Origin: Macrostomum lignano
Lineage: Eukaryota
Length of the DNA: 64,000 nucleotides
Direction: 5' to 3'
NCBI GenBank assembly: GCA_002269645.1
Contig: NIVC01001185.1
Coordinates: 278,099-342,098, forward strand
The notes under the pieces are model-generated. The model was not told the origin of the DNA. It made no database searches and saw only the letters and a program-made list of their open reading frames with translations. Positions within the stretch are counted from its first letter, which is position 1. Every line of letters begins with the position of its first letter. Of this stretch, positions 3,491-29,828 are shown piece by piece. Made by a program: the position numbers and the translations under genes.

Positions 3491-6400
3491 ATGACGTCAC
3501 TGCCATTGTCTATCAGCGTCTTCTGTCTCCTAGAAGCAGCAGCTCTTTGCTGTGCCACCAGTTCAGAGCAGTTCATCAACTTTCAGCTGCTTTACAAGTC
3601 CGATTGGAGCAGCCACACTAACAGGAAACTCGTCTTCCGGCCGGCGCTTCCGGTCGACTTTCCGTCCGTGTCGGTGAGTCTGCATCTCATGATGCTCATT
3701 GAGTCTGTATCTCATGATGCTCATTGAGTCTGTATCTCATGACGCTCATTGAGTCTGCATTTCATGACGCTCATTGAGTCTGCATCTCATGATGCTCATT
3801 GAGTCTGCATCTCATGATGCTCATTGAGTCTGCATTTCATGACGCTCATTGAGTCTGTATCTCATGATGCTCATTGAGTCTGCATCTCATGATGCTCATT
3901 GAGTATGTATCTCATGACGCTCATTGAGTCTGTATCTGATGACGCTCATTGAGTCTGTATCTGATGACGCTCATTGAGTCTGCATCTCATGACGCTCATT
4001 GAGTCTGTATCTGATGATGCTCATTGAGTCTGTATCTCATGATGCTCATTGAGTCTGCATCTCATGATGCTCATTGAGTCTGTATCTCATGACGCTCATT
4101 GAGTCTGTATCTGATGATGCTCATTGAGTCTGTATCTGATGATGCTCATTGAGTCTGTATCTCATGATGCTCATTGAGTCTGTATCTGATGATGCTCATT
4201 GAGTCTGTATCTCATGATGCTCATTGAGTCTGTATCTCATGATGCTCATTGAGTCTGCATCTCATGATGCTCATTGAGTCTGTATCTCATGATGCTCATT
4301 GAGTCTGCATCTCATGATGCTCATTGAGTCTGTATCTGATGATGCTCATTGAGTCTGTATCTCATGATGCTCATTGAGTCTGTATCTCATGATGCTCATT
4401 GAGTCTGCATCTCATGATGCTCATTGAGTCTGTATCTCATGATGCTCATTGAGTCTGCATCTCATGATGCTCATTGAGTCTGCATCTCATGACGCTCATT
4501 GAGTCTGTATCTCATGATGCTCATTGAGTCTGTATCTCATGACGCTCATTGAGTCTGTATCTCATGATGCTCATTGAGTCTGTATCTCATGATTCCCATT
4601 CCCACATTAAGATTTTCTTATGAATCTCATGAATCTCACAAATATACAATATCAAAAGTCAGTCTGACTTTTCTTCTCCACCGCCAGATCGTCTGGAACG
4701 GCCTTGGCGTCTTCTCTGTGGGAAATCGCAGTGTTCAGCACGCCTTTGACGGCCTCGCTAAGCTGGTGAAGCTGGACTTCAAGGCGACATCATCGTCTGG
4801 AAAATCCCGTCACCAGGTTCGTTTCACCTCCCAGTTGCTGCGCAGCCGTCAATTGAACGAGTCCGTGTCCTCTAATGACATCGCGCCCTACCTGATGTTC
4901 GAGTCCGTGCAGCCGCAGTTCACTCGGCAGCAAAAGTACAAAGCATTAGTGAACGGTCTGGACAATATGAATGTCAACGTGGCCAGGGTTGGTCACGAGT
5001 TTGTTGCGACGAATGACTACGCAAAGAGCTACACGTTTGATTTGAACGGCTTGGTGACCAGTGAGTCTGGCTTGTGTGACCTTTGGGTAAGGAAGGTGGG
5101 GCTTCCTAATGTTCGGGTTCTAAGTGAGTAAGGAAGCTGGTGCTGGCGCCCATGTTGCTGGCGCCCATGTTGCTGGCGCCCCTGGTGCTAAAGCCCCTGG
5201 TGCTAAAGCCCCTGGTGCTAAAGCCCCTGGTGCTAAAGCCCCTGGTGCTAAAGCCCCTGGTGCTAAAGCCCCTGGTGCTAAAGCCCCTGGTGCTAAAGCC
5301 CCTGGTGCTAAAGCCCCTGGTGCTAAAGCCCCTGGTGCTAAAGCCACTGGTGCTAAAGCCCCTGGTGCTAAAGCCCCTGGTGCTAAAGCCCCTGGTACAA
5401 AAGCCCCTGGTGCTAAAGCCCCTGGTGCTAAAGCCCCTGGTGCTAAAAGCCCTGAAATAAATTGCCCCTACCTACATGTACCTCCTGGATTCAAAGACAC
5501 CTAAATGAGATACAAAAATTATTTTCCAGTGAATCCGACAGTTGAAACCGCACATCCTCCATCGTAGAGGATTTTATTGAGCCTCGAGTCAACGGCCGTC
5601 GCCTCAGCCTGCTCTCCCAGATCTCCAGCGCCCACCCGCTGCCAGAAGCTGGAACTTCCGGCTGCCTCATCAACTTTGTCACCACAGTCTCTTTGTTGCC
5701 ATTCCTCAATGGCCAGCTGAGATTGCTGAGATTTAAAACGGCCGAAGCCGCTGAGGTCATCGCGACATGGCCGGTGCCCGGCAACCGGCTGCCCTACATG
5801 CACAGCTTCAGCCTCACGCAGCGCTACGCTGTGATATTTGCCGGTCCGCTCTACATCGACACTCAGCGAATGCTGAAGACTGCTCAACCGTTTAAGTCGC
5901 TGCGCTGGCTACCGGAATTAGCGGCAACAATTTACCTGGTCGAGCTGCGAACCGGCCTCGTGAAGTCCTTGTCAGTTCACGACGGTCGCTACCTGATGCA
6001 CCACGTCAACGCTTACGAAAATGACGACAAGATCGTGTTCTATGCGACCGCCTATTCCGACACCAAATTCTTTGCCGGTCTCGAGCTCAGCGTGCTCAAT
6101 AATGATCGGCTAAGGTGCGTTCTTTTGGCTGGTTTTTGCACTCGAGTATGGATATCTTAATTCACCTTAGACTAATGCACCATGTATCCACCCCATTCTG
6201 ATGATCCCATCTTATCCCGATGCTCCCATCCCATCCCGATGATCACATTCCATTCTGATGATCCCATCATGTCCAGATGATCCCATCCCATCTCGATGAT
6301 CCCATCCCATCCCGATGATCCTATCCCATCCCGATGATCCCATCCCATCCTGATGATCCCATCTCATCCCAATGATCACATTCCATTCTGATGATCCCAT

Positions 6401-9555: not shown

Positions 9556-12500
9556 TCAGAGCTCTTCCACCTTTTCAACCGCAGTCGTCTCGGTGCTGCC
9601 GATGTAGGAGTTCATCTCGGTGTTGACTGTCGTCCCGACAAATTTACCAGCAAACAGTGCCCGGAAAATGTAGAACAGTAGCTCCAGAAGTTCGCACAGG
9701 GTGAGTATTGAAACGCCACACCAGAGGCCCAGAATGCCTGCAATTGAAGTTAAAAAATCGCTGAGAGTTGAATGCAAGACATTCTAACACGGTACTATAA
9801 TCTGAACATCATTTCAATTATGAGTACCTCCAAAGTCAGCCACTAAGTTCTTTGTGGGGTAGGCTTCCTCTTCAGAGATCTCCTGAATTGTGGCGCTCCA
9901 CGCTTTGACTGTCAGCCAGGCGAGACGATTCTGAAGCGCCTCAAGTTCTGCGTCAAAGTTGAGCCTATCACTGGCTGTTTTATTTTCTGACGAAGACTCG
10001 GAGTAGCTCTGCACTTTCAGCAATACCTGATAGATATTAGCGAGGCCTCTCATACCGCTGATGCTGGTTCTATAGCCAAAGTTCGAGGCCAACTGTTTTA
10101 TTAGCTCAATTGATTGGGCATTTTTTAAATTAGGCCACGAATAAGTGACGAATCTGGTACTGTAGTCATCTGTGCGGCACGGCGGCTGGCACATCTGGCT
10201 GCCTTCGAACTGGTAACGCTGTATCTGTGACACCTGTTCGTTGTAGCAGGTCTCAACAACTCGAGAGAAATTGCTAATGTCCTTGATGTCGAAACAGTTT
10301 TTGTACTTTGTGACTAAAGCCACTGGAATAGGTTGAAACGATGGTAAACACTTGCAGTAGTCGATAAACTTTTGCACAATGTAGGTGTTGATGCAGTCCT
10401 CTCGCTCAGAGACAAACTGCCTCTCGGAACCTTTTAAATCACTAAAATGGCAAATTAAGTACCTGTTCATCCTTTATTTCCAGTAAAGACTCGAACGATA
10501 TGCAAATTCACTTACATTGTCCCTCCTTTTAATTCAGTCATCTCACGTAGCTTTGTCAGCTTTTCAGCCCAATCTGATGAGGCAATTACCGCCTTAGCTG
10601 CTCTCTCAATTCTGCAATTATAAAAATGTTTGATTACAAAAATCGAATACATAGATACACACGAGATCTACATGTTTGAGACTAGTTCACACAGCTCACT
10701 TTCCGCCATCATTTGATGAAGATAGATCCCAGGAAGGCAGTCGGTAACTATCCAGTTTTTCGGTCTCCTGACAAGGACTGGATTTAGTGGAGAGTCTTGA
10801 GTACTTCTCAAACCTAAGCTGCACGTCCATGCGTTGAGCAGCCACTATCGCGATACTCCTGGACGCCCAGGGAAATTTCTTCTCCGGCACAATGATCGCC
10901 TGCGGTTTTAGAAACAGCAGAATGAACTCTTTGGCAAAAAGTTTGTAGAAGCATCGTTGAAAGAATTCCTTACATTTAGCGCCGTATTGCTGTCATCAGA
11001 GGATGACATCACGCTGTCGTGAACAACTTGGTTGAGTTTTTCCATGCCAAATGGAAGCCGACCCTTGGAATCTGTCGAGTCGGTGAAGTACATGATTGAC
11101 AGCTCACTATTCGCCAGCTGTGTACTTGTCATATTGGCGGTAAACTTTTGCTTTAGAAACTGGTGGCACATGCCAAGCTGGGGGTGCTCAAAATTCACAA
11201 AGTGCTCATTGGTGCACTTCTGGCCGGCGAAGCTGCAGCTGGCAAGTGCGATGCTGAGATCGCTGCCAAATTGACGAGCGAGCAGATGCCTGCCCACAGA
11301 GTCTCTGATGGCGCCTGGGACGCTGCGAAATTTCGAATCTGCGACAATGTTTTAAATTAAGTCTGAAATTAATTGTTTTGATCTCGGATTAATATAATAT
11401 TAAACGTTCAAAACTCACAGCACAACGCTAAGTTACACGGCTCGAAGGCCATTTCGAAAAGAGTATGTTGAGAAATTTCTACGCGGTCAATGAAGCGAAG
11501 AGCGCGTTCCGGCAAGCAGGCGGGGACCTCAGACTCGAATGCTTTTTGACGCCTGAAATGAAATTGATTTATCGCATTTAGCCTTCTGTTGGAATTGTAA
11601 AACAGATAAGATGCAGGATCCTCTGGCTCACTCGAAGTGGCTGTAGTTTTCATTCGCTATGTCCATCACTATGCTCACTGAGCGGCAGTAGTTGTCCGTA
11701 TTCGTCTTGGCTACGTCTGGCGTTTCAATTTGCATTTTCAGTAGCCTCCCAACTCCTTAAATGTGAGTATTTTTGCAATCCATTTACCATATTCATTGGT
11801 TATTGTTTTAGTTAGGCCGTATGAATAAAGTGAGCTTTAGTTCCCAAATCCTAACTTAGCATGACAAAAGCAACGCGCCATCGCGTTCCGTTTCTGCCCC
11901 ACTTCAATGCTCCTATGTCTATGGCCAAAAAGAGTACGCTGTATGAAATGGAAGTATATAAAGGAAAAGACAGTAACCTCAACGCTGTATGAAATGGAAG
12001 TATATAAAGGAAAAGACAGTAACCTCAACAGGTGGCAGGAGGGAAGACATTGCAGATCTCGGATCAAAAATTTTGTTGAACAGGAGTGTCGCGAACTCAA
12101 CGTCAACGAGCTTCTTGGTCTTCATGACATTGAGATGTCAGCGCGAACGGAAGTGTAGACTAAGTAAAACGGAACAGGATAGTGTTCAATGCATTTGAGT
12201 GCACATAGAAGGCAATGCTGACTGCGTTATTAATATTGAACTTTTTGTATAATTGCTATTGTGTGTAACTGTTGGTCCGTTCGACGATGCGTGGATTGTC
12301 TATAAATACAATGGCTTGTTGTAGACAGTTGTCTATGGTAAAAAGTCTGGCTTGTTGTAGACAGTTGTCTATGGTAAAAAGTCTGGCTTGTTGTAGACAG
12401 TTGTCTATGGTAAAAAGTCTGGCTTGTTGTAGACAGTTGTCTATGGTAAAAAGTCTGGCTTGTTGTAGACAGTTGTCTATGGTAAAAAGTCTGGCTTGTT

Positions 12501-15500
12501 GTAGACAGTTGTCTATGGTAAAAACTCTGGCTTGTTGTAGACAGTTGTCTATGGTAAAAAGCCCGGCAGCAAAGGATTGAAGAGGGTGGAAATATACGAA
12601 TCCAAACTTGCAATCGATGGTCAGATTCTCGTTAAAGACAGAGAGCCAGCTTAACTCAATAAAGCGACTTTGCACGCATAAAGTGAACCTTCAGTTGACG
12701 GCAGCAGCATACCAGGGAATTAGCAACAGAATTCGGTGCTCAGTCATCATTTATGACATCAATTCATAAACTATATCTCAATTCCGCTCAGAGTCTGAGA
12801 AGTTTGACAACTCAGAGAAGTAATTGATCCCTTTATTCATACGGCCTATTTCATTTTACACTATGTAATTAATTCTTCTGCATCATATTTCGCACCGCGG
12901 CTTCTCATGCTCTGCTCTTGAATGCTGAACAGACGGCCCCAGGCAACGCAGTCCCTTCCAGGAAGCGTGTCGTTCTGCCAACCGGTGTACATCGACATTC
13001 GCTGCCGTTCCGCCGACTCGGAGCTGGAGCTCACGATACAGTCGTAGTTTTTGGATATGGCTATAATTATAAAAACAGAAACGGGCTGCAAGGATTAGTA
13101 CAGCAAACATTAGAGAAGGTAAAATATTTGCTAGAAATTGGCATCCGCCACGTTTACACACTGAAACTACTAGACTGAGCACTCAACCGATTAAATTTCC
13201 GGCCAACCAGTTTCGCTCAGTTGGTCAATAAGCGAATGCAAGCTTAAGTTTATTTGATCAACACGATCGCTTTTAGTAACTATGGAAATAGCAACGGTAG
13301 CCCCGATCGATATATGGTAAATTTAACAGCCGAAACATGGATAAAATTTAACGGTTATGAGCGTATTTGATCGGTGAAAGCTCCAAATTGAAACCAAATA
13401 TTCCAAATTCTTTACTCTGGGTGTTCTTATTTTTCCAACTGTGGTGTTTCAGAGGAATTTTATGGGAATTGGAGGGGCCGCAGCCCTTTCGTGTGGTGGT
13501 TGGCGACCCTGTCTGTCTCTTGGTGGGCGCCCCTGTCTCTTGGTGGGCGCCCCTGTTTCTTGGTGGGCTGGGCGCCCCTGTCTCTTGGTTAGCGCCCCTG
13601 TCTCTTGGTTAGCGCCCCTGTCTCTTGGTTAGCGCCCCTGTCTCTTGGTTAGCGCCCCTGTCTCTTGGTTAGCGCCCCTGTCTCTTGGTGGGCGCCCCTG
13701 TCTCTTGGTGGGCGCCCCTGTCTCTTGGTGGGCGCTCCTGTCTCTTGGTGGGCACCCCTGTCTCTTGGTGGGCGCCCCTGTCTGTCTCTTGGTGGGCGCC
13801 CCTGTCTCTTGGTGGGCGCCCCTGTCTGTCTCTTGGTGGGCGCCCCTGTCTGTCTCTTGGTGGGCGCCCCTGTCTCTTGGTGGGCGCTCCTGTCTCTTGG
13901 TGGGCACCCCTGTCTCTTGGTGGGCGCCCCTGTCTGTCTCTTGGTGGGCGCCCCTGTCTCTTGGTGGGCGCCCCTGTCTGTCTCTTGGTGGGCGCCCCTG
14001 TCTGTCTCTTGGTGGGCGCCCCTGTCTCTTGGTGGGCGCTCCTGTCTCTTGGTGGGCGCCCCTGTTTCTTGGTGGGCTGGACGCCCCTGTCTCTTGGTTA
14101 GCGTCCCTGTCTGCCTCTTGGTGGGCGCCCCTGTCTCTTGGTTAGCGCCCCTGTCTCTTAGTGGATGCCCCTATCTCTTAGTGGGCACCCCTACCCCGGT
14201 GGATTCCCGTTCAAGTTTTGTCAAAAGTTGAGCTCCTGTCATTCGTCGGGCTTGTTTACCACTTTCGTTTAGATTTTGGAGAAGCCCCACTGCTTTAGGG
14301 CGCGCCCCGATGGCCACCCTGCAAACGCCATTGATTTTTTCCTGTATATTGAATGGGTCTACGATAACTGCCTTCCATTCCTCCCCCTGAAATACGATAC
14401 TGAGCAATAAAATAAACCAAGAAATTTTATTAGTGCTGCATTTTAGAAGTCATAAATTCATATTGCACAATTTACACTTTTTATAGCTAGATGTGGTAAT
14501 TAATAGAGTACCCAGGCTTACCATTTTTTCAGAAAATGTTCTGTAAAATATGCCTTTTAGAAGCTAGTCATTATTGTTATTATCTGGGATGCTCTGTGTA
14601 AAACCTGGGATTTCCGGCTTTTCCGGCTTTTGATAGTCAGATTTGCACTTCTCTATTGAACTATTAATTAATTCATGTCGGCAAAACTACAAAAAATTCT
14701 TGAATATACAAGAACAAAATTTATATTTTCAGGTGTTGATTAACTTCACTACTTATGTTTGAGCGGTAGCGAATAATGATTCTCGATATCAGTATTTGTT
14801 AAATATTATCGCTGTAGCATTTCTGGCAGTCTAATTTGAACAGGTGCAACCTTATCGATTTAAGGCGTTCTCAAACTCACGACAGTAAGGTATGTCGCAC
14901 AATGCAGCATTCAGCCTGCCGCTCTCATCGTCCGTAAAAAAGCAATAAGGCCCGTCTGAAAATGCCGCTAAGTTGCTGAAGTTTTCGATGTGCATAGGCT
15001 GGCTGTCTGGAATCAAATCAAAGATTTGAGCGTGAGCAATTTCTTTATTAGATTAGTAAGTTACTGTGAAATTGGACTTGCCGACATCCCGGATCTGCAG
15101 GATGACGGCAATGCTACTGTCTGAACCGCAGGTCTGTAGGCGGCTGTTGGCGCACGGTGATGTACAGTTTGTTCGACTGCTGTTGTCAACGCCGTCCAAT
15201 CGTCCGCACAGACAGTCGCCACCGGTCACGAGAGCCGCATAAGGGAAATTGTAGCGATCGCAGCACTCGGCGCAGGTCTCATGCGCTTCGATGCCGTTTC
15301 TGTAGCAGGTGAAGTTGAATGCAGCCGCGGTCGCTGCATCAGTCACGGGGAAGCAACCGATCTGTTGAAGCTTAGGACCTAAAGCGAGTAGGAAAAAGTT
15401 GTTCAGAAAGCACCCGGATATTAACAGTATTAACAGTAAGAGTATACCAAACCATTTTTAGAAAATTCTTCGTGCTTTAACAATTACTTGATTGCTAGCA

Positions 15501-16848
15501 AACTTTTTGTTGGGCAGCCTCTCTAACAAGAATCAAGTCGCCAGCCCTCCGGACCGTTAAGGCATTCAACAGTTCAGCAAGAAGATCGGATTTTGCATCA
15601 GAGCAGCCTTGGCAAGCCTCTAAATTTCATCAGAACGTCGACCAAATGTGTTTGTATCAGCTCTGACTTCGCAGGTCACTGGATTTCACCCAGGCGGCGC
15701 TTCTGGGAGGTAACACCTGGTGACCATGGACATCTCATTGCGAATTTCTCTGATGTCTCTGATCAAGCCTCGACAATGGTCAAACCTCTACTGGTAGGTA
15801 TCCGCAGTTAGTCTCTTAAACATTCAGCCATCGACAGACGCCAGACCCAGACGCCATCGACACTTTCAACCGGGGGGCTGGATTCCCCCTATGATAGTTC
15901 TACTGTTAATTAACCTAAGAGGTTTTGTTGAATTACTTACGAGTTGCTTTGTGTAGAAACGTCAATAGAGGTAAACCAGGAGGAGAGCGGCATCGAGTCT
16001 CATTGTCCGAGAAGTTAAGAGACAGCAGGCTCGCAGCCAGGCTGGCCTCGCCTCTGCTCTGCAGCATCCGAGCTGCATCGTTCCATCTCATACACGGCGT
16101 CCTAGTGATGTAGGGCTTTAAACTCGGGACAGCTGTGTAGTTAAAGTACCTTGTGTCGTTGAAGTCCAGCCGAACTGTTGAGTACCCGTATACCACAGCC
16201 GAGCTGACGTTGCCTGTGTAATCATTGCCAGTGAGACTAGTTCGGCAATCCAAATCTTGGCCTACGGTGTTCAATGGAATTTTTCTAAAAGTTAGTCGTA
16301 CTGACAACAATAATAGTTTATAATAAGCAACTTTTATTAATTATGTTAAACTTGCCGTTAAGAGGCACCTGTAACGACTTCATCAGCGATTCCTCGGTGC
16401 TTTGAATGACATCTAGAAATGCTTTGGTCGGCTCGTTCAGTACAGAATCAGTTTTTTTAGATAGATCAAAACTGTAGAATTCGATTTTTTCGCTTGTGTT
16501 CTTCTTAGTAAGATGCTCCATGTTCTCAATATTGAAGGTTGTCAACTTTTCTACCATGCGACTGGCCGTGATGGCCCGCGTGGGACAGATGTACACATCC
16601 GGGAACTGGAACTTTAACGAGGACATGCTCATGCTGGTCATCACTGGGGCCTGAAGGAACCTTTCAAACAAAGTGGACAGGTGGTACGCAAACCCGCTGT
16701 AGGTGCCTAGCAGGAATAGGACCCAGATGAGCCTGCCAACTTGGCTGGACTGCTCAGAGAATCTGCCAAGTCCGTGAGCAGTTGTGTAGCCACAGAAACT
16801 GTTCACTGGTGCGCTCAGCTTCCGTGATGAGGAGTTGTAGCTACTCAT
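9556..16848 (-). CDS. DEG/ENaC (amiloride-sensitive Na+ channel family) subunit with kringle-like, WSC and kringle-like inserts; 10 exons, ~964 aa
   Basis: Exons 16848-16356, 16261-15941, 15378-15082, 13060-12896, 11755-11632, 11552-11419, 11338-10974, 10899-10700, 10441-9828 and 9737-9556 total 2895 nt, open throughout. Motifs: TTAHG, TM1, FPDVYICP, SCSFAGQKC..F..FEHPQLGMCHQF, thumb Cys (YCKCLP, CQPPC), and ADFGG-ILGLWCGVS..TM2. Only one TM1 and one TM2 occur in the region. Confidence 0.85.
12313..12560. repeat. 36-bp minisatellite (GGCTTGTTGTAGACAGTTGTCTATGGTAAAAAGTCT), intronic in the DEG/ENaC gene
   Basis: ~7 tandem copies. Confidence 0.92.
12896..13060 (-). CDS. Exon encoding the N-terminal half of the second kringle-like module (continues in 11755-11632 and 11552-11419)
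   Basis: YDCIV...MYTGWQNDTLPGRDCVAW, then NYCRS and SEVPAC in the next exons, matching kringle C..Y.G...T..G..C..W / NYCR / P.C. Phase 1-1 exon of 165 nt. Confidence 0.6.
13500..14175. repeat. 20/24-bp minisatellite (GGCGCCCCTGTCTCTTGGTG), intronic
   Basis: Tandem copies, with a variant carrying an extra TCTG. Confidence 0.93.
15082..15378 (-). CDS. WSC domain exon of the DEG/ENaC gene
   Basis: QIGCFP...FTCY...ETCAECCDRYNFPYAALVTGGDCLCG...NCTSPCANSRLQTCGS is the WSC Cys pattern (GC; C..C; YA..G..C.CG; C...C....CG). Acceptor CTTTAG, phase 1. Confidence 0.85.
15941..16261 (-). CDS. First kringle-like exon of the DEG/ENaC gene
   Basis: DCRTSLTGNDYTGNVS...TRTPCMRW...NETRCRSPPG. Phase 1-1 exon of 321 nt with a GTAAGT donor. 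Only 3 of the 6 kringle Cys are visible. Confidence 0.65.
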
Positions 16849-19768
16849 GGCTAGTGGTGTGTTTTTTGGTTGGGCCTGACGGTGTAAAAAATGTTTAAGC
16901 TGCAGCCGTTTAAGCTCAGCTAAAAGAATAGCTGAGAATATTTGCGTCAGTATCGAGAATTTAAGTCAAAGCACTTTTTCGTCCGTTTTCTGCTGAAATA
17001 GACTGCGTGGAATATAATAGCTTGTTCAGAAACGGCTGAGCCAATACAATTCATGTGTGCCCAGAAACGGACTGTTTCCTGTACCTGCAGCCTCGTAAAG
17101 TCCTCAACTAGTTCTGTCTACCGTGTACGCTGAAATTAATTTGGAAAATGAGATTGACAGAATGCATGTTTACATTTACCAAACATATTACTTTGTCAGT
17201 AGAAACTTCAGTGCCTGTACATGAACAACTGAAGTACCAGGACGCTACAAGTACACTCGATTTCTTAGATGTGATCTGGAGGCCGGTAAGGAGAGTGTAT
17301 TTGCCGTATCGCCAGTGCATTTAGTATGCTCTCGAGAGAACGCATAGCTATGAATGAGGTTCGTCGTATTCTTTTTTGTGCCTTTGCAATTCACATAAAT
17401 ATACTCGTACAGAACATCGCGATGGCAATTCCGGAAACTTTGCGCATTCTCAGAAACATCGATAATGATCGTTATTTACGCAATTTGGTCTTTAAAAAAG
17501 ATTCCGTTTGCAATGATTTACATCGCATCATCCAATAAACTATATACAGTGCTTATTTATTATGTCATAAGTCACACTGCACCTGACTTATAAAGGTCAG
17601 TATTTGTACCTATATTTTTTCTGATAGGAAAATATACACAAAAACAATCCGAAATATACAGAGTGCAATGCTGAATGCCAAAATTCTGTAGCTACGCTTT
17701 AAACTTCCAGCAACTGAAAACTCCGTCCAGGAGACCTTTATCGAGAATATGGAGAGTCAACTTCACATCTAACGCCGATTTGATCAGATATCAGGATAAA
17801 AAAGAAAAATTTTAGGACCTTGTATACATGTAAGTCTGGTTGTCTGTCATAGCTTCATGAAAAAGTGCGTCTCTTTCACAAACGCGGAATTTCACAACTG
17901 CAAACCTTCAAAACCGCTAAATCGCCTACTTTAATAAGCGCTATAAATTTCATAAATGCGAAACTTCACAACCGCGAAACTTCATAACCGCAAAACTTCA
18001 ACTTCACAACCGCTAAAAAGACTTCGGTTGTTTAAGTTTCGCGTTTATGAAAGCAAGTGCTTTTAGCGGTCGTGAAATTTCGCTTTTGTGAAACCCACCC
18101 CATGAATTCATCACAATTCCATCTTGACACCAAGGCTCAAGAAGGAGTTGCTGAGATTCCACGGTTAAGAGGGGTTACCGATATTTTAGGCTATAGATTT
18201 TTTCTATCATGTCGACTGGTAATTCTCGATACAAGGTGCTAATACTAGTTATTTTGCTAAATTTATCATAAAATTTCGTTCATGATTAAAACCCTGTTGT
18301 CTGCAGATATTTGAGTATATGTTAGCTGTAAGCTCATTGAATTGCCGAAAAATCTGGTTTTGAAAAGTCCCATGCGCTTTAAACAACCAGCTTCATCAAA
18401 TATCGCCATAAAATCCGCTATAAAACCTGGCAAGAAGGATAGTGAAAATTTTCTGTAACAAAAATTAATGTTGTTTATTCTAAGCAAAAAATCTGGTGTT
18501 GTGAATTAAACTAGAATCAAGGCCTGTGCGTTACCTGATAGACTGGTGGCCTGGACAAACTTGGAACCGCTCTGATAAGGGGTTATTGCTCAGATTTTAC
18601 TGTCAGCGCCAGTCAGAAGCTGAGCGTCAGTCACTCAATAGCAGCCACGGTGCTTCCGGTTGCCCTATCTGTTTACGCAAGCAATCTCATAAGATAATTG
18701 AATTAGGCGGAGTGGAATAAAAGTCTATTTTGTATAGACATCATTAAAGGGAAGTAAACAGTGTTCTCTGTTTTTATGCCATAACAATATTTTGGGTGAA
18801 GCGGAGACTTTTAATAATTAATATAAATAAGTACTCTGCTACTAAAAGCAATTTTATATGCCACCCACCCCACCAGGATCAGTTAGTGGGAGCCATATAC
18901 CCCACGAAATCATTTACTGGTAGCCATATACCCGACCAGGTCATTCAGTGGTAGTCTTACGACCCACCAAAGTACTTCAGTGGTAATTCTATGAATAATC
19001 CGTGTGGACATTTCAACACACTGCAATGAAAAATCATTGTTCTTATGGCTTGGGAGATGCAAACACACTGTATGATTTCCACGTGAGTGAGGCATTCAAT
19101 TGAAGCCTGCAACAATAGACTGAAAAGGCAGTGTGTACATACTCGTACTCGTGCATGGGCTTCAATAAGCCTCGTAAATAATTTCCCAATTCTCTATTGT
19201 TGTTGCTGCTGCCACTAGACTGGAAAAAAATTGATCAACACAAAAGCTACGGCACCATTGGGAAGATGTGCCGGTCATGTGAGCCGCTTAGAAAGAGGAG
19301 AGAGAGAGAGCAGGAGAGTATAATCAAAGAAAAAAATTGGTTGAAAAGCGCGGTTTTGTCGGAAGGGTAAAAACAATGGGACATGTAGTTTCTGAGCTCT
19401 CAGCTAGGTGCCCAGAAGAGGACGCTGGGAAAAAGGCGGCTGCATGAGGTGGGATGTGGAGACTCCCAAATGGAGAGAGTTTGGAGAAATTGGAGAGGGG
19501 AAGAGAAATGGGCTGGGAATAAAATATGAAAATACAGGGAGAATTGATGGTTAATGCTGGGTTTGGCAAACGGACGAACAATGAGAAAGTGGTGGAGATT
19601 TATGATAGGTTCAGAGAAATAAAAAGGTGAATATCCACATCACACAGGCGTTCCTATTGGTCCTGATCTAAGAAAATCGCAGTATAAATTATTATTAAGA
19701 TTTTTATTAGTGACCAGGTGTTTCAAGGGTTAGTGTTCCAGGAGTAACTAATTCAATTGCTGATAACA

Positions 19769-20099
19769 ATGACTCTAATCACCCGGCTTCTTTTTCTTAG
19801 TTGCTCGCTGTCTGTCTCCATGGCAGCCCTGACAATTGTATGCGAAAATGATACAATGACGGCCGACTGCGCAACCCAGGTGATATCCGTTTCCATAGCA
19901 ACATTCGGCAAGTCGAGCATGTTCTCCGCCTCGTGTCCGAACCAGTCGCCGACTGAGTGCAACAGCGGCACCGCCTACGGGCTGATCAGCGACGCCTGCG
20001 AGGGCCAGAACAGCTGCTCGATGGCCGCGAGTAAAGCACTGTTTGGCGATCCGTGTCCCGGATACGAGAGCTACATGGTGCTGTATTACAGCTGTACAG
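19769..20099 (+). CDS. Signal peptide + SUEL-type (galactose/rhamnose-binding) lectin domain exon
   Basis: MTLITRLLFLSCSLSVSMA leader, then VCE..C...FGK...C...C...CEGQNSC...FGDPCPGYESYMVLYYSC with all 8 Cys. No stop; ends at the donor G|GTGAGG in phase 1. Confidence 0.88.
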
Positions 20100-20174
20100 G
20101 TGAGGCGTTGAGGTTTCAACAGTACAACAGATCGATTTTCAAACGGGTGCCATTTTTTATTCGGTCCTTTTTCT

Positions 20175-20620
20175 TCATGGTTGGACTGTCAGTTCCTCAG
20201 TTTGACTGGCACGGAATGAAAGTCCTTCATCACAGTGGGACTGTCAGTTCCTCAGTTTGACTGGCACGGAATGAAAGTCCTTCATCACAGTGGGACTGTC
20301 AGTTCCTCAGTTTGACTGGCACGGAATGAAAGTCCTTCATCACAGTGGGACTGTCAGTTCCTCAGTTTGACTGGCACGGAATGAAAGTCCTTCATCACAG
20401 TGGGACTGTCAGTTCCTCAGTTTGACTGGCACGGAATGAAAGTCCTTCATCACAGTGGGACTGTCAGTTCCTCAGTTTGACTGGCACGGAATGAAAGTCC
20501 TTCATCACAGTGGGACTGTCAGTTCCTCAGTTTGACTGGCACGGAATGAAAGTCCTTCATCACAGTGGGACTGTCAGTTCCTCAGTTTAACTGGCGCGGA
20601 ATGAAATTCCTTCATCACAA
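20175..20620. repeat. 55-bp minisatellite, ~8 copies, in the intron following the SUEL exon
   Basis: Period of 55 measured between CTGTCAGTTC at 20186 and 20241. Copies are near-identical with no spacers. Confidence 0.95.
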
Positions 20621-21968: not shown

Positions 21969-23195
21969 ATGGAGGGCACAATGTTTTTCACACTTCGTCA
22001 AGCCAATTGCACGCCGGAGTTTCGTCGGGCAGCCTACAATCCCTCGGACACTGTCCGGGTGACCATCTACAGCTTGACAGTGTTGCAGGCCGCCATTCTG
22101 CCTGTTGGGGCTGCCCTCAACATTGCCTGTTTTGCTACCCTGCTGCGCTATCCACTTGGTGCCGAGGTGAACGGGCACTTTGTGAGTTTCAGCGTCTGCG
22201 ATACAGCGTTTCTCCTGTTTAATCTGCTCGACACCATCAGCCATTGTGTCGAGAACTCAACACCGTTGACTGACGGTCCGGAACCCTTCAACTACATTGC
22301 CTATGTCCATCCGATTGCGTGGACACTGCGCAGTGTGGTGTACACTGCTCACAGTTGGCAGACGGTGCTGCTCAGCGGCCTCAAATGGCTACGCATCTGC
22401 CGGCCGCTGTCGGCCCTGCCAGAGTCCAGAATTCGCCACCTCATCGGGCTTGTATGGCTGTACAGTCTGGTCACCAGCATTCCACCGATTCTGCTGTTCC
22501 AAGCATTTGTCACGGTTCTGTATGCCAACTGCCATGACCAGGGCTTCCGGGTCGCCGGCAGCGGTTATCACCGACTCTACAGCATCGACAACAGTGGAGA
22601 CGTTGGTGGCGGCATCATACCGCCCGCCATTCCACCGTCATTTGTCGCCGTGAATGCGTCCTTGCTGCCGGCGCTTATCTGCCTGATCTGCAGTCTGGGC
22701 ATCGTGTGGCGCCTGCGACACCCAGTCCTGCATCATCTACGGCGTCGCCGGCATCTCCGTCGGCAAGAAAACTTCCTGGATCCTGGCGCAGCTCGGCTAG
22801 GCCGCGAAGCCACTCGCGCAGTGCTCATGTCGGCTAACAGTTTCCTGCTCTTCCAAATCCCGATGGTTATCTGGACACTGGTGGACACCTGGTACTGGAA
22901 GCTGCTGCAGCCGGCGGTCTTCTCTATGCTCGTTGTAGTCAGCAACACAATCAGCCAAGCATTCTTTGCGGTGGACCTGTCGGTGTGTCTTCACAGCAAT
23001 CACCAGTTTTCTAGCAACCTTCGAAGATACCTGCAGCCGTTTTGCCAGTGCAGAAAGCACTTCAAGCAGCAAAAACAGCAGCAGAAGCAGGGCAACAAGC
23101 AGTTTGAGCTTCGACGACTTCGAGGCTTTTCGGACTGCAATGGCGTGGAAGAGCAGGCCGGGACCTTCTCTATCTGCAGCTCAACTTTGATCTGA
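21969..23195 (+). CDS. Divergent class A (rhodopsin-like, peptide-receptor-like) 7TM GPCR, single 408-aa exon
   Basis: Seven hydrophobic segments: TM1 G..LN, TM2 SVCD, TM3 LKWLRICRP (DRY position), TM4 W, TM5 LLP, TM6 FLLFQIP, TM7. A strong acceptor TTTTGTTTTACCAG ends at 21963. Confidence 0.88.
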   Translation: MEGTMFFTLRQANCTPEFRRAAYNPSDTVRVTIYSLTVLQAAILPVGAALNIACFATLLRYPLGAEVNGHFVSFSVCDTAFLLFNLLDTISHCVENSTPLTDGPEPFNYIAYVHPIAWTLRSVVYTAHSWQTVLLSGLKWLRICRPLSALPESRIRHLIGLVWLYSLVTSIPPILLFQAFVTVLYANCHDQGFRVAGSGYHRLYSIDNSGDVGGGIIPPAIPPSFVAVNASLLPALICLICSLGIVWRLRHPVLHHLRRRRHLRRQENFLDPGAARLGREATRAVLMSANSFLLFQIPMVIWTLVDTWYWKLLQPAVFSMLVVVSNTISQAFFAVDLSVCLHSNHQFSSNLRRYLQPFCQCRKHFKQQKQQQKQGNKQFELRRLRGFSDCNGVEEQAGTFSICSSTLI

Positions 23196-25711: not shown

Positions 25712-26575
25712 TCATTCGATAGTGAAATTCAGAAATGGATCCAAGCATTCGCAGCCTCCGTGATATGAAAATGATTCCGAATGGTCATACAGAGCCATGT
25801 CGCGGATTCTGGCACGGTTCGCAGCATCCTTGCCATCGCTTGGCTCCCTAGGCCCCCAGAGTCCGCCGCTGCTGGTGTCCAGAATCGGCAGCGGCCAGCC
25901 GCAGTCCGCCCACGCCCAGCTGCCGTTGGCCAGAATTGAAGCACCAACCCAGATCTGATGGCTGCTGTCAGTCAGACCAGTTGACGTCCTCACATCCTGG
26001 AGCTCATCAACGCTGCTCAGGTCGGCGAGCTTCGTCAGCGGCATGGCGGACCCGTCCGAGGTGGTCAGGAAGCTCCGGCGGCTGTCGGCCTGAGCGCTCC
26101 ATCCGGTCACCTGCCCGTTCCCAGCTGCCTTGTACAGCGAGCCCTTGAAGCGGCTGTCGCTGACGCCGGGCACCCAGCGATAGTCGGCGGGACAGAGCCG
26201 GCCTGGCTCGAGACCCTCCGACTGCTTGACGAAGACTCGAAGCCTCCTGCTGCTGCAGCCGCTGCTCGCCATCGAGGCGGGATCGAGCAGCAGTCGCGAG
26301 CTGCAGGCGTCGAAGGCGAACAGCAGGCAGAGCTGTCGGTCCGAGGAGGCTGCCGCAGCCTCCATGGCGAAGGCTCTGCATCTCGGAGCCGCTCCACAGC
26401 GAAGCGCACAGGCCGCGATGTCAAGGTCGAGCAGCTGGTAGTGAGCTGGGGACACGCAGTTAGAGGTGAGGATCGGGTGGAAGGCGACTCGCTGCCTGCA
26501 GCAGGTTGCGGGGTGGCTCAGCAGCAGCAGCGGCAGCAGTAGTACGAGTATAGGAAATGTACGCAAAGAATTCAT
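25712..26575 (-). CDS. Secreted PAN/apple + C-type lectin-like protein, paralog 1 (intronless, 287 aa)
   Basis: Leu-rich signal peptide; PAN pattern C...ACALRCGAAPRCRAF...CLLF; CTLD elements LCP..Y, IWVGA...GSWAW, WGPREPS, CE. Confidence 0.85.
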   Translation of the reverse strand: MNSLRTFPILVLLLPLLLLSHPATCCRQRVAFHPILTSNCVSPAHYQLLDLDIAACALRCGAAPRCRAFAMEAAAASSDRQLCLLFAFDACSSRLLLDPASMASSGCSSRRLRVFVKQSEGLEPGRLCPADYRWVPGVSDSRFKGSLYKAAGNGQVTGWSAQADSRRSFLTTSDGSAMPLTKLADLSSVDELQDVRTSTGLTDSSHQIWVGASILANGSWAWADCGWPLPILDTSSGGLWGPREPSDGKDAANRARIRDMALYDHSESFSYHGGCECLDPFLNFTIE

Positions 26576-27109: not shown

Positions 27110-28958
27110 CTTACTTTGACTTAGCTGCAGGGTGGTCCGTAGACACAGCGGGGAGGCGAGGGTCGCCCATTCCGCTAGCCCCTGAAGGCCCGCAGACAGG
27201 CAGAGGCGTGGGGCCGGGTCAGGGTGGTCCACCGGTCCGTCCTGCAGCGTGATCTTCCGTTGGGAAGAAACTGGCTCGTCTAGTCGCCCGATGGAACTGG
27301 ATGAGCCGTGAGATGCTGTCGGGCTGGCAGACCTCGTCAATGGACGGGTTCGGCCCGAGGTAGCGTAGCCGGTCTCTGTTAAAGAAAGGGCAGTGACAGA
27401 CAAAGTGCTGAGCATCTTCATTGTCGCACTCGCAAAAGGGGCAAATTTCGCTCTCGAGGTCGCCTCGGAGGAAGCAGTGCCTGGCGAGGTAGCCATGGCC
27501 GGTAAGGGTCATGACAAGGGCTCGAATATCCTTCCGATTCTGGTTCAGAAGGATGTTTCTGAGCCTGCGAGACGGGCAAGGAACCGCGGCACGAGATTGC
27601 CGGTAGTTTTGGGTGCCCGCCCATCTGTCCCTGTGGAGGGAGTCAGCCCAGTCGTCGATCTGACGATTGATGACTGTCAAGGGCATAGGGACCAGGGGGG
27701 CAGGGCCGAAGAAAGAGCCAGAGCCGCCCCTCTTGGCGAGGGTATCTGCCAGCTCGTTCCCCGGAAACCCTGCGTGCCCTGGGATCCACTTCAGCCTGAC
27801 AGTATTGCTTCTGGCCAGGAGGTTGAGCTGCCGGGCGCAGTCGGCGACTGTCCGGGAGTTCGTTGTGGTGTGGCAAAGGGCCTGTAAGGCCGCTTGGCTG
27901 TCGGAGTGGATGACAATAGTCTTTCCTCTCGTAACCTTGGCGTTCATCTCTGCAGCGCAAGAGCTGATGGCAAGGACTTCGTTCTGGAAGACTGTGGAGA
28001 GTCTACCAGTGTGCTGGGCATGCGTGGCAATGACGCCGCCGCTGATGATGATGCAGACCCCAAAGCCGGCGCGACCGTCTTTGATGGATCCGTCCGTGTA
28101 GCAATGGACCTCCTGGAAATTCCAGTGGTCATTGGCAGCATCCCTAGAGGGGATGGTGACCTTGTAGCGCTGAAAGAGGTTGAGAGTGCGGGGTTCGCAG
28201 TCAGATAGGACGTGGAGCCCGCCGCTGTCTCTCAAGTCCTTGAGGCAGAGGTCAGCGTGGGGCAGAAGCTTGCGCTTAGCCATGGCCCTATGGGGCTGGA
28301 TTCGAATGCCAGCGTCAGCTAGACGGCGGGCAGTCTTAGCCGCTTCCCTGCGGACAAAGATGTCCAGCGGAGGAATGTTGAGGAAGGCGTTGAGGCCATC
28401 GTTAGGAGCAGACGGAGGGGCGCTCATGATCGTGCGACATGCGCGCCCTTGCGCTCTCCTGAGAGCCTCTAGACAGGTCTTTATCTGCAGGGCGCTAGCC
28501 CAGATCAGGCCGCCATACGAGATAGCGGGCCTAACCATTGCAGTGTAGATCCACCAGAGGCGCTTGGGGGTGAGCCCCCAGGTGGTGCCGACAGCCCTGC
28601 GCAATTGCGCGAGGTCTGCGAAGGCCTTTTTGGCTTTTGTTTGAACGTGGGGTGACCAGTTCAGCCTGTGGTCCAGGGTAATACCCAGACATTTAGTCTG
28701 CTTGCAGAAGGGGATTTCCCTTCCGTAAAGCGTGAGCGGCCGAATCTGCCACTTGGTCCTGCTGGGGAACATGATCGCTGCGGTCTTAGTCTCAGAGAGC
28801 CTTAAACCACAGCGGTCCGCCCATTGCTCAGCGGCGTAGATAAAGTTCTGAAGAAGGTCCCTGAGGGTATCAGGGGACGGACCAGATGCCACCGCGGTGA
28901 CATCGTCCGCATAACCAACTTTCAGAATGGGATCAGGCCGAACATCCCGGAGGAGCTC
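27110..28958 (-). mobile_element. 5'-truncated non-LTR retrotransposon (RT C-terminus + RNase H + Cys/His knuckle; LOA/R1/I-group type)
   Basis: Uninterrupted frame with YADD, GITLDHRLNW, RNase H (YTDGS, NEVLAI, SDSQAAL, WIPGH, GNELAD) and CPFC...H..C. Flanked by a 10-bp TSD, ATCGACCGTA, at 27100-27109 and 28959-28968. Confidence 0.95.
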
Positions 28959-29828
28959 ATCGACCGTAAGACCTATTCTTGCCACAGCTAGCACCATAGT
29001 CATCTTAAACTATGTTTTAAGATATCCCCTGTCCCTAATATCAGGGTCTGAGGTTAAAAACAGTATAAACATAAAACTTCAAGTTAGAAATATGAACTAA
29101 TTAAAAATAGTTACAACTGGGTAGTTTTGATTCGACCTTAAGACCGATGAAATCTTCCAATCTGCTAATGGCCACCCCAAAATCAAACCTCGTTCGTGCA
29201 GGAAAATCTACTGATATCAACTCATCCTTAAAAAAGTTACCGTTTAGTTTTAAGATATGAGCTGGGCCTGAAGGTGCTCTGTCACGATGCAAAACTGATG
29301 AGCAAAATGTTTGGGATTTCCGAGTTGAACTACTCATAGGGCCTATTCTACGAGTATGAAGATGAGAAGTGACTCCTGAATTTGTGTCCTGACTGGTGGA
29401 ATAGAAAACTTTCTGATTTTTGGAACTATCATGATAAAAAAATTAAAAAGTGTCTGATGCTCTCTGGACTAATTGAAAATCATTGACTTCTTTCCGACTA
29501 CAATAAATTTTAAAATGCAATTGTTTGAACTGGCTAAAGGAAACAAAACACAAAGCACGCGAATTTGCAATGCAGAATCGAAGAGTAGAGCTTCCGTTTT
29601 ATTTAAAGTTTGTCAGCTCGTGCAAACCTCTGAGTGAAATCTAAGTTTCAAGTAGTCAAAAAATTAACCAATACATCGGTAAATGGTTGCGTCACTCATG
29701 TTCAGGATGTAGTTCAAATTCTAGAGTTTTCGAGTTCAATTTGTCTATAAAACATACAGTTCCGTGTGGTATCTTCTTGCACGATTTATCCTATCCGTTT
29801 CCTTGAGGTCTCGGGATTTTGGTTTAAT

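What the first reader, a model, noticed from the sequence alone, without database searches (positions are those of the whole stretch)
9556..16848. DEG/ENaC channel with a kringle-WSC-kringle cassette spliced into its extracellular loop
Seen: the region has one TM1 exon (TTAHG...FPDVYICP) and one TM2 exon (GG-ILGLWCGVS). Between them, in the post-TM1 'finger' position, lie a kringle-like exon, a WSC exon and a second kringle-like module. All ten exons splice into one open frame (2895 nt, ~964 aa), several hundred residues longer than a typical subunit. Established: the finger is the hypervariable ligand/protease-sensing region of DEG/ENaCs (ASIC, FaNaC, ENaC). WSC domains are linked to glycan binding, kringles bind proteins or lysine ligands, and kringle+WSC is the Kremen-type pairing. 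Inference: a ligand- or tether-gated cation channel in which glycan/protein binding, or extracellular-matrix tension, could gate the pore. I do not recognise this architecture from characterised family members.
Basis: partly seen in the sequence, partly recalled or inferred. Interest (0 to 1): 0.9.

Follow-up and report, generated by a model that had tools for sequence, protein, structure and literature searches.

The report
Flatworm DEG/ENaC channel with kringle-WSC insert
This is an intact gene for a sodium-channel subunit of the DEG/ENaC family from a Macrostomum-like flatworm; its outer "finger" region carries about 390 extra residues made of two kringle modules, one split by a WSC (glycan-binding type) domain, a design that exists in databases only as unstudied flatworm predictions.

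Summary
The gene is real and intact. It is a minus-strand DEG/ENaC subunit gene (16848-9556) with Pfam ASC at 7e-40, the HG motif, TM1, FPDVYICP and a TM2 G-V-S filter.

My 12-exon, 1038-aa model matches, exon for exon, the transcript-derived gene of a Macrostomum lignano protein (52% identity, 97% coverage).

The finger insert holds:
- a WSC domain (Pfam 34 bits; PDB profile hits Kremen1 and yeast Wsc1 at about 1e-9);
- two divergent kringles. Pfam Kringle fails, but profile-profile P is about 1e-12 and shuffled controls give P >= 0.007.

The layout is nested, not linear. The WSC exon lies inside kringle 1, between its third and fourth cysteines. The missed exon supplies that kringle's last three cysteines.

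The full cassette was found only in M. lignano, in several paralogue groups auto-named "WSC domain-containing protein". The architecture is therefore already in databases. No paper in the searched library pairs DEG/ENaC channel terms with 'WSC domain', and the only degenerin+kringle hit is an ENaC-protease review.

Gating by a ligand or tether is untested inference. Verdict: new variant of a known kind, moderately interesting.

The parts
16356..16848 (-). Exon 1 (493 nt, ends in phase 1, GC donor G|GCAAGT). Encodes the cytosolic N-terminus with the HG motif (TTAHG, residue 22), TM1 (about residues 38-61), the post-TM1 strand FPDVYICP (residue 82) and the proximal finger helices up to residue 164.
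   Evidence: Aligned to FaNaC1 residues 9-112. M. lignano counterpart is 496 nt in the same phase.
15941..16261 (-). Exon 2 (321 nt, phase 1-1). N-terminal three quarters of kringle 1: C170, G..Y.G, C221-x2-W, NFS...RC255RSP, plus an inserted helical hairpin between Cys2 and Cys3.
   Evidence: hhalign of this part alone against 15 true kringles covers template columns 1-61, P 6e-7. Controls. Invariant Cys/Gly/Tyr/Trp across the family.
15082..15378 (-). Exon 3 (297 nt, phase 1-1, GC donor). WSC domain with 10 cysteines (residues 272-370), inserted between Cys3 and Cys4 of kringle 1.
   Evidence: Pfam WSC 34.2 bits against a cut-off of 27.8. Family profile hits Kremen1 at 3e-10 and yeast Wsc1 at 1.4e-9. 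Foldseek on the homologue's model matches 7pz2 at 3.5e-4.
14881..15006 (-). C-terminal quarter of kringle 1: GPYC392FF...LC407DIPYC412.
   Evidence: splice sites. Conserved in 6 of 8 M. lignano homologues, with a 122-nt counterpart exon. hhalign alone covers columns 58-85, P 2.5e-9. PDB profile hits to HGF, plasminogen and neurotrypsin kringles.
12896..13060 (-). Exon E (165 nt, phase 1-1). Kringle 2, first part: DC420 ... YTG..N.T.PGRDC450VAW.
   Evidence: 46 of 47 PDB hits of the family profile are kringle chains, aligned on this motif. M. lignano counterpart is also 165 nt.
11632..11755 (-). Exon F (124 nt, phase 1-2). Kringle 2, middle part: conserved IxTPD motif and NYC491R.
11419..11552 (-). 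Exon G (134 nt, phase 2-1). Kringle 2, last part: VPAC521 ... EPC548NLALC553.
   Evidence: hhalign of kringle 2 (E+F+G) against true kringles gives P 3.5e-12 over columns 8-85. M. lignano counterpart is also 134 nt.
10974..11338 (-). Exon H (365 nt, phase 1-0). The channel core resumes here: IRDSVGRHLLARQFG helix, C588SFAGQKC, HPQLGMC.
   Evidence: Aligned to FaNaC 'CRF/CHY..C'. 71% identity to P0001.
10700..10899 (-). Exon I (200 nt). Channel extracellular core.
   Evidence: M. lignano counterpart is also 200 nt.
10516..10611 (-).
   Evidence: Canonical ag|...|gtaagt sites. M. lignano counterpart has identical length and phase. Aligned.
9828..10441 (-). Exon K (614 nt). Cysteine-rich thumb/palm part of the ASC domain.
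   Evidence: Pfam ASC best stretch 787-998. Aligned to Aplysia FaNaC residues 378-588.
9556..9737 (-). Exon L (182 nt including the stop codon). TM2 with GILGLWCGVSILTLCELLE (G-V-S at the selectivity-filter position) and a short C-terminus.
   Evidence: Aligned to FaNaC1 GGQLGLWVGISLITLAEVLE. Hydropathy peak at residues 973-1008.

Best explanation
What it is (shown). The locus is an intact 12-exon gene for a 1038-residue DEG/ENaC channel subunit. It belongs to a subfamily so far seen only in the flatworm Macrostomum lignano.

The channel core is complete: HG motif, TM1, FPxxxxC strand, cysteine-rich extracellular domain, and TM2 with G-x-S. Its closest solved relatives are FMRFamide-gated channels.

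About 390 disulfide-rich residues (165-553) are inserted into the distal finger, after the helix that ends exon 1 and before the helix and strand carrying CSFAGQKC. The insert is a kringle whose Cys3-Cys4 loop holds a complete WSC domain, followed by a second kringle with expanded loops.

How it arose (inferred). The whole cassette is bounded by phase-1 introns, and in the window exons 2, 3, D and E are each phase 1-1. This is the signature of exon shuffling into a phase-1 intron of an ordinary channel gene.

How it most likely works (inferred, not tested). Three cassettes would crown the upper outer corners of the trimer. In FaNaC that corner binds the peptide and moves on gating; from my own knowledge, ENaC's protease-sensitive finger insert lies in the same region. 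The cassette would act as a built-in receptor module for an extracellular protein, glycan or matrix partner, and its occupancy or pull would be passed through the finger helices to the thumb and pore.
For: Gene model and relatives:
- Open 12-exon frame with consensus splice sites.
- Exon-for-exon match to the M. lignano P0001 gene: sizes 493/321/297/126/165/124/134/365/200/96/614 nt (window exons 1-K) against 496/303/292/122/165/142/134/359/200/96/617 nt; the last shared exon is 181 nt of coding sequence against 191 nt. The phases match except for a 1-nt shift at one junction.
- 52% identity over 97% of the length to P0001, which carries ASC + WSC.
- The GenBank M. lignano models are ORFs of a genome-guided transcriptome assembly (PMC5730564), so in relatives the cassette and both TMs lie on one mRNA.

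Channel core:
- Pfam ASC 7e-40.
- HG, FP..IC and G-x-S aligned to FaNaC1 and Aplysia FaNaC.

Cassette domains:
- WSC.
- Kringles: the family profile hits almost only kringle chains in the PDB.
- The cassette profile hits true multi-kringle proteins at 1e-25 to 1e-16 in 1.84 billion representatives.
- hhalign P values are 9e-13 (kringle 1 = exon 2 + exon D, all 85 columns) and 3.5e-12 (kringle 2). Reversed and shuffled controls give P >= 0.007.

Nesting:
- The exon-2 part covers kringle columns 1-61 and the exon-D part covers columns 58-85.
- Cysteine counts are 3 + 10 + 3. The three canonical kringle disulfides (1-6, 2-4, 3-5) can form only if the two parts fold together.

Insertion site:
- The site maps to about FaNaC1 residues 139-156, at or just after helix alpha3a.
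- In FaNaC1, helices alpha1-alpha3a form the ligand pocket, and the end of alpha2 and alpha3a move 3-5 Angstrom on gating.
Against: - There is no transcript evidence for this species.
- Two of the eleven introns need the rare GC donor.
- Pfam Kringle is not significant on any single sequence.
- The AlphaFold models are weak (cassette pLDDT 60.8; full length 39). The nested fold and the position of the cassette on the channel are therefore inferred from sequence, not seen in a model.
- From my own memory of plasminogen kringles, the acidic pair of the lysine-binding site after CRNP is absent from both kringles (CRSPPGL, CRSVSIV). The classic kringle ligand mode is therefore unlikely.
- Skipping the whole cassette, or single modules, keeps the frame. 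Some M. lignano models lack exon D or exons F+G, so the cassette may be facultative.
- No functional data exist for any member.
Confidence: 0.6

Rival explanations
1. The cassette is mainly structural or for biogenesis. It would be a glycosylated, disulfide-rich cap that aids folding, trimer or heteromer assembly, surface clustering or shielding, with gating set by some other stimulus (peptide, pH, constitutive activity).
For: - 11 N-x-S/T sequons and 22 cysteines in 389 residues.
- The lysine-binding residues of classic kringles are not kept (sequence compared with my own memory of them).
- Yeast Wsc1's WSC domain is described as a mechanosensor domain in the title of PDB entry 7pz2, and from my own knowledge it mediates clustering.
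- The channel core alone is complete.
Against: The insertion sits in the most gating-relevant and most ligand-diverse corner of the family. Motifs beyond the cysteines are invariant across paralogues at 30-50% identity (G..Y.G, YTG..N, TPD, NFS..RCR.P.LPL), which suggests a conserved surface.
Confidence: 0.25
2. The cassette is a facultative, alternatively spliced module. The main product would be an ordinary subunit of about 650 residues, and cassette-containing forms would be minor or stage-specific isoforms.
For: Joining exon 1 to exon H is in frame and gives 649 aa. Skipping D, J, F+G, exon 3 or exons 2+3+D also stays in frame. M. lignano entries exist that lack exon D (P0006) or exons F+G (P0005).
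Against: Every M. lignano model recovered keeps most of the cassette, and no cassette-free form of these genes was found. The variant entries are UniProt-only predictions from an older assembly and may be model errors.
Confidence: 0.1
3. This copy is a decaying or non-functional paralogue in a repeat-rich region, or the cassette exons belong to a separate nested gene and the single frame is a modelling artefact.
For: Two GC donors. The two long introns are filled with minisatellites. There is no expression evidence for this locus. A pN/pS estimate between two M. lignano homeologues was uninformative (21 differences).
Against: - All 12 exons are open, with every family-invariant cysteine and motif present.
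- Both GC donors have the perfect GCAAGT context and sit at or within 1 nt of the intron positions of the M. lignano gene.
- The cassette exons have no start codon, signal peptide or stop of their own, and they share strand and phase with the channel exons.
- Transcript-derived relatives join them to the channel exons.
Confidence: 0.05

Closest known systems
FMRFamide-gated sodium channels (FaNaC; PDB 8on7, 7yvb) and DEG/ENaC channels in general (Pfam PF00858)
   Same: Two TMs, HG motif, FPxxxxC strand, cysteine-rich extracellular domain and G-x-S in TM2. FaNaC is the best solved sequence match (2e-15). The finger is the variable, ligand-determining region.
   Different: The finger carries an insert of about 390 residues made of recognisable mobile modules. 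Characterised members, as far as I know them, have only helices and loops there. There is no evidence of peptide gating. Three other M. lignano DEG/ENaCs near the FaNaC branch did not respond to peptides (PMC9234716), but these are different genes.
Kremen1/2 (kringle-WSC-CUB Wnt/Dickkopf co-receptors; PDB 5fws, 5fww)
   Same: Kringle and WSC occur together. Kremen1 is the best PDB hit of the cassette profile (3e-10), and Kremen is among the top Foldseek hits.
   Different: In Kremen the domains are in series and followed by CUB and one TM. Here the WSC lies inside the kringle, there is no CUB domain, a second kringle follows, and the whole unit is a loop of an ion channel.
ENaC finger insert (GRIP domain) and the extra extracellular domains of nematode degenerins (MEC-4/MEC-10)
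   Same: These are lineage-specific additions to the finger or extracellular region that tune gating (protease release in ENaC; proposed matrix tethering in mechanosensory degenerins, cited). The details are from my own knowledge.
   Different: Their folds are unrelated. Those inserts are not kringle or WSC modules and are much smaller.
Yeast Wsc1 cell-wall stress sensor (PDB 7pz2) and other WSC proteins such as polycystin-1
   Same: The WSC fold: profile E 1.4e-9 and Foldseek 3.5e-4. Both are surface sensors. That polycystin-1 has a WSC domain is from my own knowledge.
   Different: Wsc1 is a single-pass sensor that signals through kinases. Here the WSC is built into a pore-forming subunit.

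Membership tests
DEG/ENaC (Pfam ASC, PF00858) | Significant match to the family profile across the protein | tested here: met
   137.8 bits, E 7e-40, cut-off 23.6, in three stretches split by the insert.
DEG/ENaC (Pfam ASC, PF00858) | Two transmembrane helices flanking a large extracellular domain; N-terminal HG motif; post-TM1 FPxxxxC; G-x-S in TM2 | tested here: met
   TTAHG, FPDVYICP and GVS are aligned to the FaNaC1 and Aplysia FaNaC equivalents. Hydropathy peak at TM2. TM1 is identified by alignment only.
DEG/ENaC (Pfam ASC, PF00858) | Trimeric, amiloride-sensitive, Na+-selective conduction | not testable with these tools
   Needs expression and electrophysiology.
WSC domain (PF01822) | Profile match above the curated cut-off with the conserved cysteine set | tested here: met
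   34.2 bits on the exon alone and 27.4 in the full protein, against a cut-off of 27.8; 10 cysteines. The M. lignano homologues score up to 43 bits.
WSC domain (PF01822) | WSC fold | tested here: met
   On the homologue's model (47% identical cassette, region pLDDT 65-77): Foldseek to Wsc1 7pz2 at 3.5e-4 with TM 0.45-0.60, plus Kremen and glyoxal oxidase WSC. Modest confidence.
Kringle domain (PF00051) | Match to the Pfam profile above its cut-off | tested here: not met
   Best is 11 bits, E 0.56, against a cut-off of 34.3. One M. lignano fragment reaches 22.7 bits.
Kringle domain (PF00051) | Homology to true kringles by profile methods, in register over the six cysteines | tested here: met
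   hhalign P 9e-13 (kringle 1) and 3.5e-12 (kringle 2) against 15 kringles cut from Pfam-confirmed proteins; controls give P >= 0.007. PDB profile hits are almost all kringles. Library hits to multi-kringle proteins at 1e-25.
Kringle domain (PF00051) | Triple-loop fold with 1-6, 2-4 and 3-5 disulfides | not testable with these tools
Kremen family | Serial kringle-WSC-CUB ectodomain on a single-pass receptor | tested here: not met
   No CUB hit. The WSC is nested within the kringle. The host is a two-TM channel. It resembles Kremen in its modules but is not a member.
FaNaC (peptide-gated) subfamily | Phylogenetic placement within FaNaCs and gating by FMRFamide-type peptides | not tested
   Only nearest-structure similarity was established. 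The finger residues that bind FMRFamide are not alignable even among FaNaCs.

The most novel reading that the evidence does not exclude
The WSC-in-kringle crown is the channel's own sensor. A DEG/ENaC pore would be gated directly by binding of a glycan or matrix protein, or by force through that attachment. That would make it a self-contained glycan-gated or tethered mechanoreceptor channel, built by exon shuffling. It would also be the first example I know of a recognised adhesion or ligand module grafted into the gating finger of this family.
Probability: 0.15. Interest if true: 0.85.

Novelty: new variant of a known kind. Interest (0 to 1): 0.55.

Why it matters
DEG/ENaC channels respond to very different stimuli (protons, peptides, proteases, force), largely through their variable finger. 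How new sensitivities arise is an open question.

In this subfamily, evolution appears to have pasted ready-made extracellular binding modules into the part of the finger that FaNaC uses for its ligand and moves during gating. If the cassette gates the pore, three things follow:
- it would be a natural example of modular sensor grafting onto a trimeric channel;
- it would be a candidate for a matrix-tethered or glycan-sensing channel;
- it would be a template for engineering.

The WSC nested in a kringle loop is also an unusual domain-in-domain arrangement. If the cassette is only decorative, the locus is still a clean case of phase-1 exon shuffling into a channel gene.

The practical value is limited for now. 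The family is known only from one flatworm genus and has no functional data.

Tried and rejected
1. Pfam Kringle on the single modules, and on exon 2 + exon D joined, was not significant. It was replaced by profile methods.
2. The spliced window protein cannot be handed to the structure or representative-search tools, so M. lignano homologues were used instead.
3. AlphaFold of the P0001 cassette gave only pLDDT 60.8. This was good enough for the WSC and Kremen Foldseek matches, but not for testing whether the two kringle-1 parts pack together.
4. AlphaFold of full-length P0001 failed (pLDDT 39) and was not used.
5. pN/pS between the homeologues P0011 and P0155 rested on only 21 differences (0.30 in the cassette, 0.89 elsewhere) and is uninformative.
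6. My exact spliced-mapping script failed on L002. tblastn shows that gene has an extra intron in exon 1 and a 6.7-kb interruption in the exon-F equivalent.
7. GT alternatives to the two GC donors all run into stop codons or the wrong phase (worked out by hand from the sequence; the splice sites used are listed).
8. No second copy of the gene lies in the window.
9. An exact look-up of a window ORF to name the species found nothing on record.
10. The nested-gene idea was rejected. No independent start, stop or signal peptide exists, and the plus-strand ORFs in the introns are translated minisatellites.
11. Literature searches for ENaC + 'WSC domain' and for 'WSC domain' + amiloride-sensitive gave 0 papers. 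Degenerin + kringle gave one unrelated ENaC-protease review.


Full report
**Observation.** The region holds a minus-strand, multi-exon animal gene.
- exon 1 (16848-16356) with TTAHG, a hydrophobic TM1 and FPDVYICP;
- a last exon (9737-9556) with GILGLWCGVSILTLCELLE;
- cysteine-rich exons between them.

**Gene model.** Two further exons belong to the gene.
- Exon D (15006-14881, 126 nt) lies 75 nt downstream of the WSC exon. It encodes ...GPYCFFTDDESGRLNAALCDIPYC.

Both have canonical splice sites and keep the frame. The full model has 12 exons, 3117 nt and 1038 aa.

The donors of exon 1 and of the WSC exon are GC, both in the perfect G|GCAAGT context. I found no GT alternative that keeps the frame.

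**Relatives.** A search of 5.8 billion protein clusters found eight proteins, all from the free-living flatworm Macrostomum lignano. The best, P0001 (BOX15_Mlig006056g1, 1049 aa), is 52% identical over 97% of the model and carries Pfam ASC + WSC. The alignment shows exon D in six of eight homologues and exon J in all that reach that region.

I mapped P0001 exactly onto its genomic locus (L001). It has 13 exons, and the first 12 correspond one to one with mine:

| Exon | 1 | 2 | 3 | D | E | F | G | H | I | J | K | L |
|---|---|---|---|---|---|---|---|---|---|---|---|---|
| M. lignano (nt) | 496 | 303 | 292 | 122 | 165 | 142 | 134 | 359 | 200 | 96 | 617 | 191 |
| Window (nt) | 493 | 321 | 297 | 126 | 165 | 124 | 134 | 365 | 200 | 96 | 614 | 181 |

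(The window's exon L is given without its stop codon.) The phases are the same except for a 1-nt slide at the WSC/exon-D junction. The window's GC-donor introns sit at or within 1 nt of those conserved positions.

The GenBank annotation of that M. lignano assembly consists of ORFs from a genome-guided transcriptome assembly (StringTie/TACO plus mapped de novo transcripts; PMC5730564). In relatives, therefore, the cassette exons and both TM exons are on one mRNA. It does not answer it for this locus.

**Channel core.**
- Pfam ASC scores 137.8 bits (E 7e-40).
- Against all PDB sequences, the cassette-deleted protein best matches the FMRFamide-gated channels 8on7 (2e-15) and 7yvb.
- The HG motif, the FP..IC strand and the TM2 G-x-S position (GVS against GIS) are aligned.

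Nothing suggests a broken channel.

**The WSC domain.**
- Pfam gives 34.2 bits on the exon alone (cut-off 27.8).
- The family profile hits Kremen1 (3e-10) and yeast Wsc1 (1.4e-9) in the PDB.
- Foldseek on an AlphaFold model of the P0001 cassette returns Wsc1 (3.5e-4) and Kremen first.

**The kringles.** Pfam Kringle fails on every single sequence, so I tested homology with profiles.
- A profile of the second module hits 47 PDB sequences at E <= 10. Of these, 46 are kringle chains, the best at 0.005.
- A profile of the whole cassette, run against 1.84 billion representatives, hits proteins at 1e-25 to 1e-16 that Pfam confirms as multi-kringle proteins (1e-46 to 1e-105).
- hhalign against 15 kringles cut from those proteins gives P 3.5e-12 for module 2.
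- hhalign gives P 9e-13 for exon 2 joined to exon D, covering all 85 kringle columns with the six cysteines in register.
- Reversed or column-shuffled kringle profiles give P >= 0.007.

**Nesting.** The exon-2 part alone aligns to kringle columns 1-61 (Cys1 to CRNP; P 6e-7). Exon D alone aligns to columns 58-85 (PWC...C.IP.C; P 2.5e-9). The two are complementary pieces of one kringle, with the WSC exon between them.

The cysteine counts are 3 + 10 + 3, then 6 in kringle 2. The kringle disulfides 1-6, 2-4 and 3-5 all link the two pieces, so the pieces must fold together with the WSC looped out between Cys3 and Cys4.

The architecture is therefore kringle 1 [WSC inside] - kringle 2, not kringle-WSC-kringle. 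This rests on sequence. The AlphaFold model was too weak in the kringle parts to show it (pLDDT 60.8 overall and below 50 at the start of each kringle). The full-length model failed (pLDDT 39).

**Position on the channel.** The cassette begins after residue 164, and the core resumes 34 residues before CSFAGQKC. Using the FaNaC1 alignment blocks, the site maps to about FaNaC1 residues 139-156.

In FaNaC1, helices alpha1-alpha3a (V87-F144) form the FMRFamide pocket. Ligand binding moves the end of alpha2 and alpha3a by 3-5 Angstrom and pulls the thumb (PMC11026163).

**Origin.** In the window, exons 2, 3, D and E are each phase 1-1. F plus G together are 1-1, and the flanking channel exons end and start in phase 1. 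This is the classic pattern of module insertion by exon shuffling (established knowledge). It also means that skipping the cassette or single modules stays in frame.

Some UniProt M. lignano entries lack exon D or exons F+G. They may be isoforms or model errors.

**Distribution and novelty.**
- In both large protein searches, the full cassette appears only in M. lignano: P0001/2/4, P0003/6/10, P0005/7, P0008, P0011/P0155, P0014, P0015, P0038. These form at least six groups with 31-55% identity between them.
- The window protein nests inside this radiation, next to P0003/P0006 (52-53%).
- An exact look-up of a neighbouring window ORF found nothing on record. The source is probably another macrostomid or an unannotated M. 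lignano copy. I could not decide which.
- UniProt already labels these proteins 'WSC domain-containing protein', so ASC+WSC is in databases.
- The kringles go unrecognised, and I found no paper that links a DEG/ENaC channel to a WSC or kringle domain.
- The M. lignano DEG/ENaCs tested in oocytes by Dandamudi et al. are different genes.

**Function.** Shown: an intact channel core with a conserved, cysteine-invariant cassette. Several non-cysteine motifs are also invariant across paralogues at 30-50% identity.

Inferred: the cassette forms a crown at the gating-relevant corner and acts as a receptor for a protein, glycan or matrix partner.

Against a classic kringle mode: the acidic pair that I recall as the lysine-binding centre after CRNP is missing in both kringles.

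A purely structural or assembly role, or facultative inclusion, cannot be excluded. I rate the identity and architecture as very likely, and the sensor-grafting mechanism as perhaps one chance in three.

**Verdict.** The gene is real and its structure is interesting. It is a new variant of a known kind and belongs to an uncharacterised, database-only, Macrostomum-restricted subfamily. Interest is moderate (0.55): attractive to channel biologists and students of domain evolution, but with no functional evidence yet.

Noticed in passing
window 55700-64000: A 238-bp satellite (97% unit identity) fills at least 8 kb to the end of the window. TRF reports 43 tandem-repeat rows in the 64 kb overall.
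   Followed up: no
window 13513-14192, 12312-12561, 11936-12029: Minisatellites (20-bp unit x32, 36-bp x6.9, 46-bp x2) fill the two long introns of the channel gene (1820 and 1140 nt). The other nine introns are 74-562 nt. The plus-strand 'ORFs' here are translated repeats.
   Followed up: partly
window 16355 and 15081 (minus strand donors): Two GC-AG introns occur in one gene, both G|GCAAGT. The M. lignano homologue uses GT at the equivalent introns.
   Followed up: partly
window 25712-26575 and 29829-30716 (minus), 27219-29003 (minus): Two very similar single-exon ORFs with leader-like N-termini (287 and 295 aa; no Pfam hit at E <= 0.001) flank a reverse-transcriptase/RNase H ORF. This looks like a local duplication around a retroelement.
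   Followed up: no
window 4574-5131 and 5693-6160 (plus): Two exon-like ORFs match RPE65/carotenoid oxygenase (Pfam 2e-9 and 1e-16). A neighbouring gene lies downstream of the channel gene's 3' end.
   Followed up: no
window 19757-20260 (plus) and 21969-23195 (plus): A SUEL-type galactose/rhamnose lectin domain ORF (3e-15), and a 408-aa single-ORF rhodopsin-type GPCR-like protein (7tm_1 at 24 bits, below its cut-off).
   Followed up: no
window 45898-46554 (plus); 42000-46000: An Ist1 (ESCRT-III regulator) exon (2e-24) lies next to an AT-rich stretch (32% GC against about 45-50% elsewhere).
   Followed up: no
L002 6010-6099 and 12782-12883; L002/L003 3001-3650: In the M. lignano P0011/P0155 clade, exon 1 has an extra intron. 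In L002 the exon-F equivalent is interrupted by about 6.7 kb that the homeologue L003 lacks.
   Followed up: no
M. lignano proteins P0006, P0003, P0005 (alignment A1): These family entries lack all or part of exon D (P0006, P0003) or exons F+G (P0005). All the deletions are in frame. They are possibly alternative splicing of cassette modules, or errors of the older gene set.
   Followed up: partly
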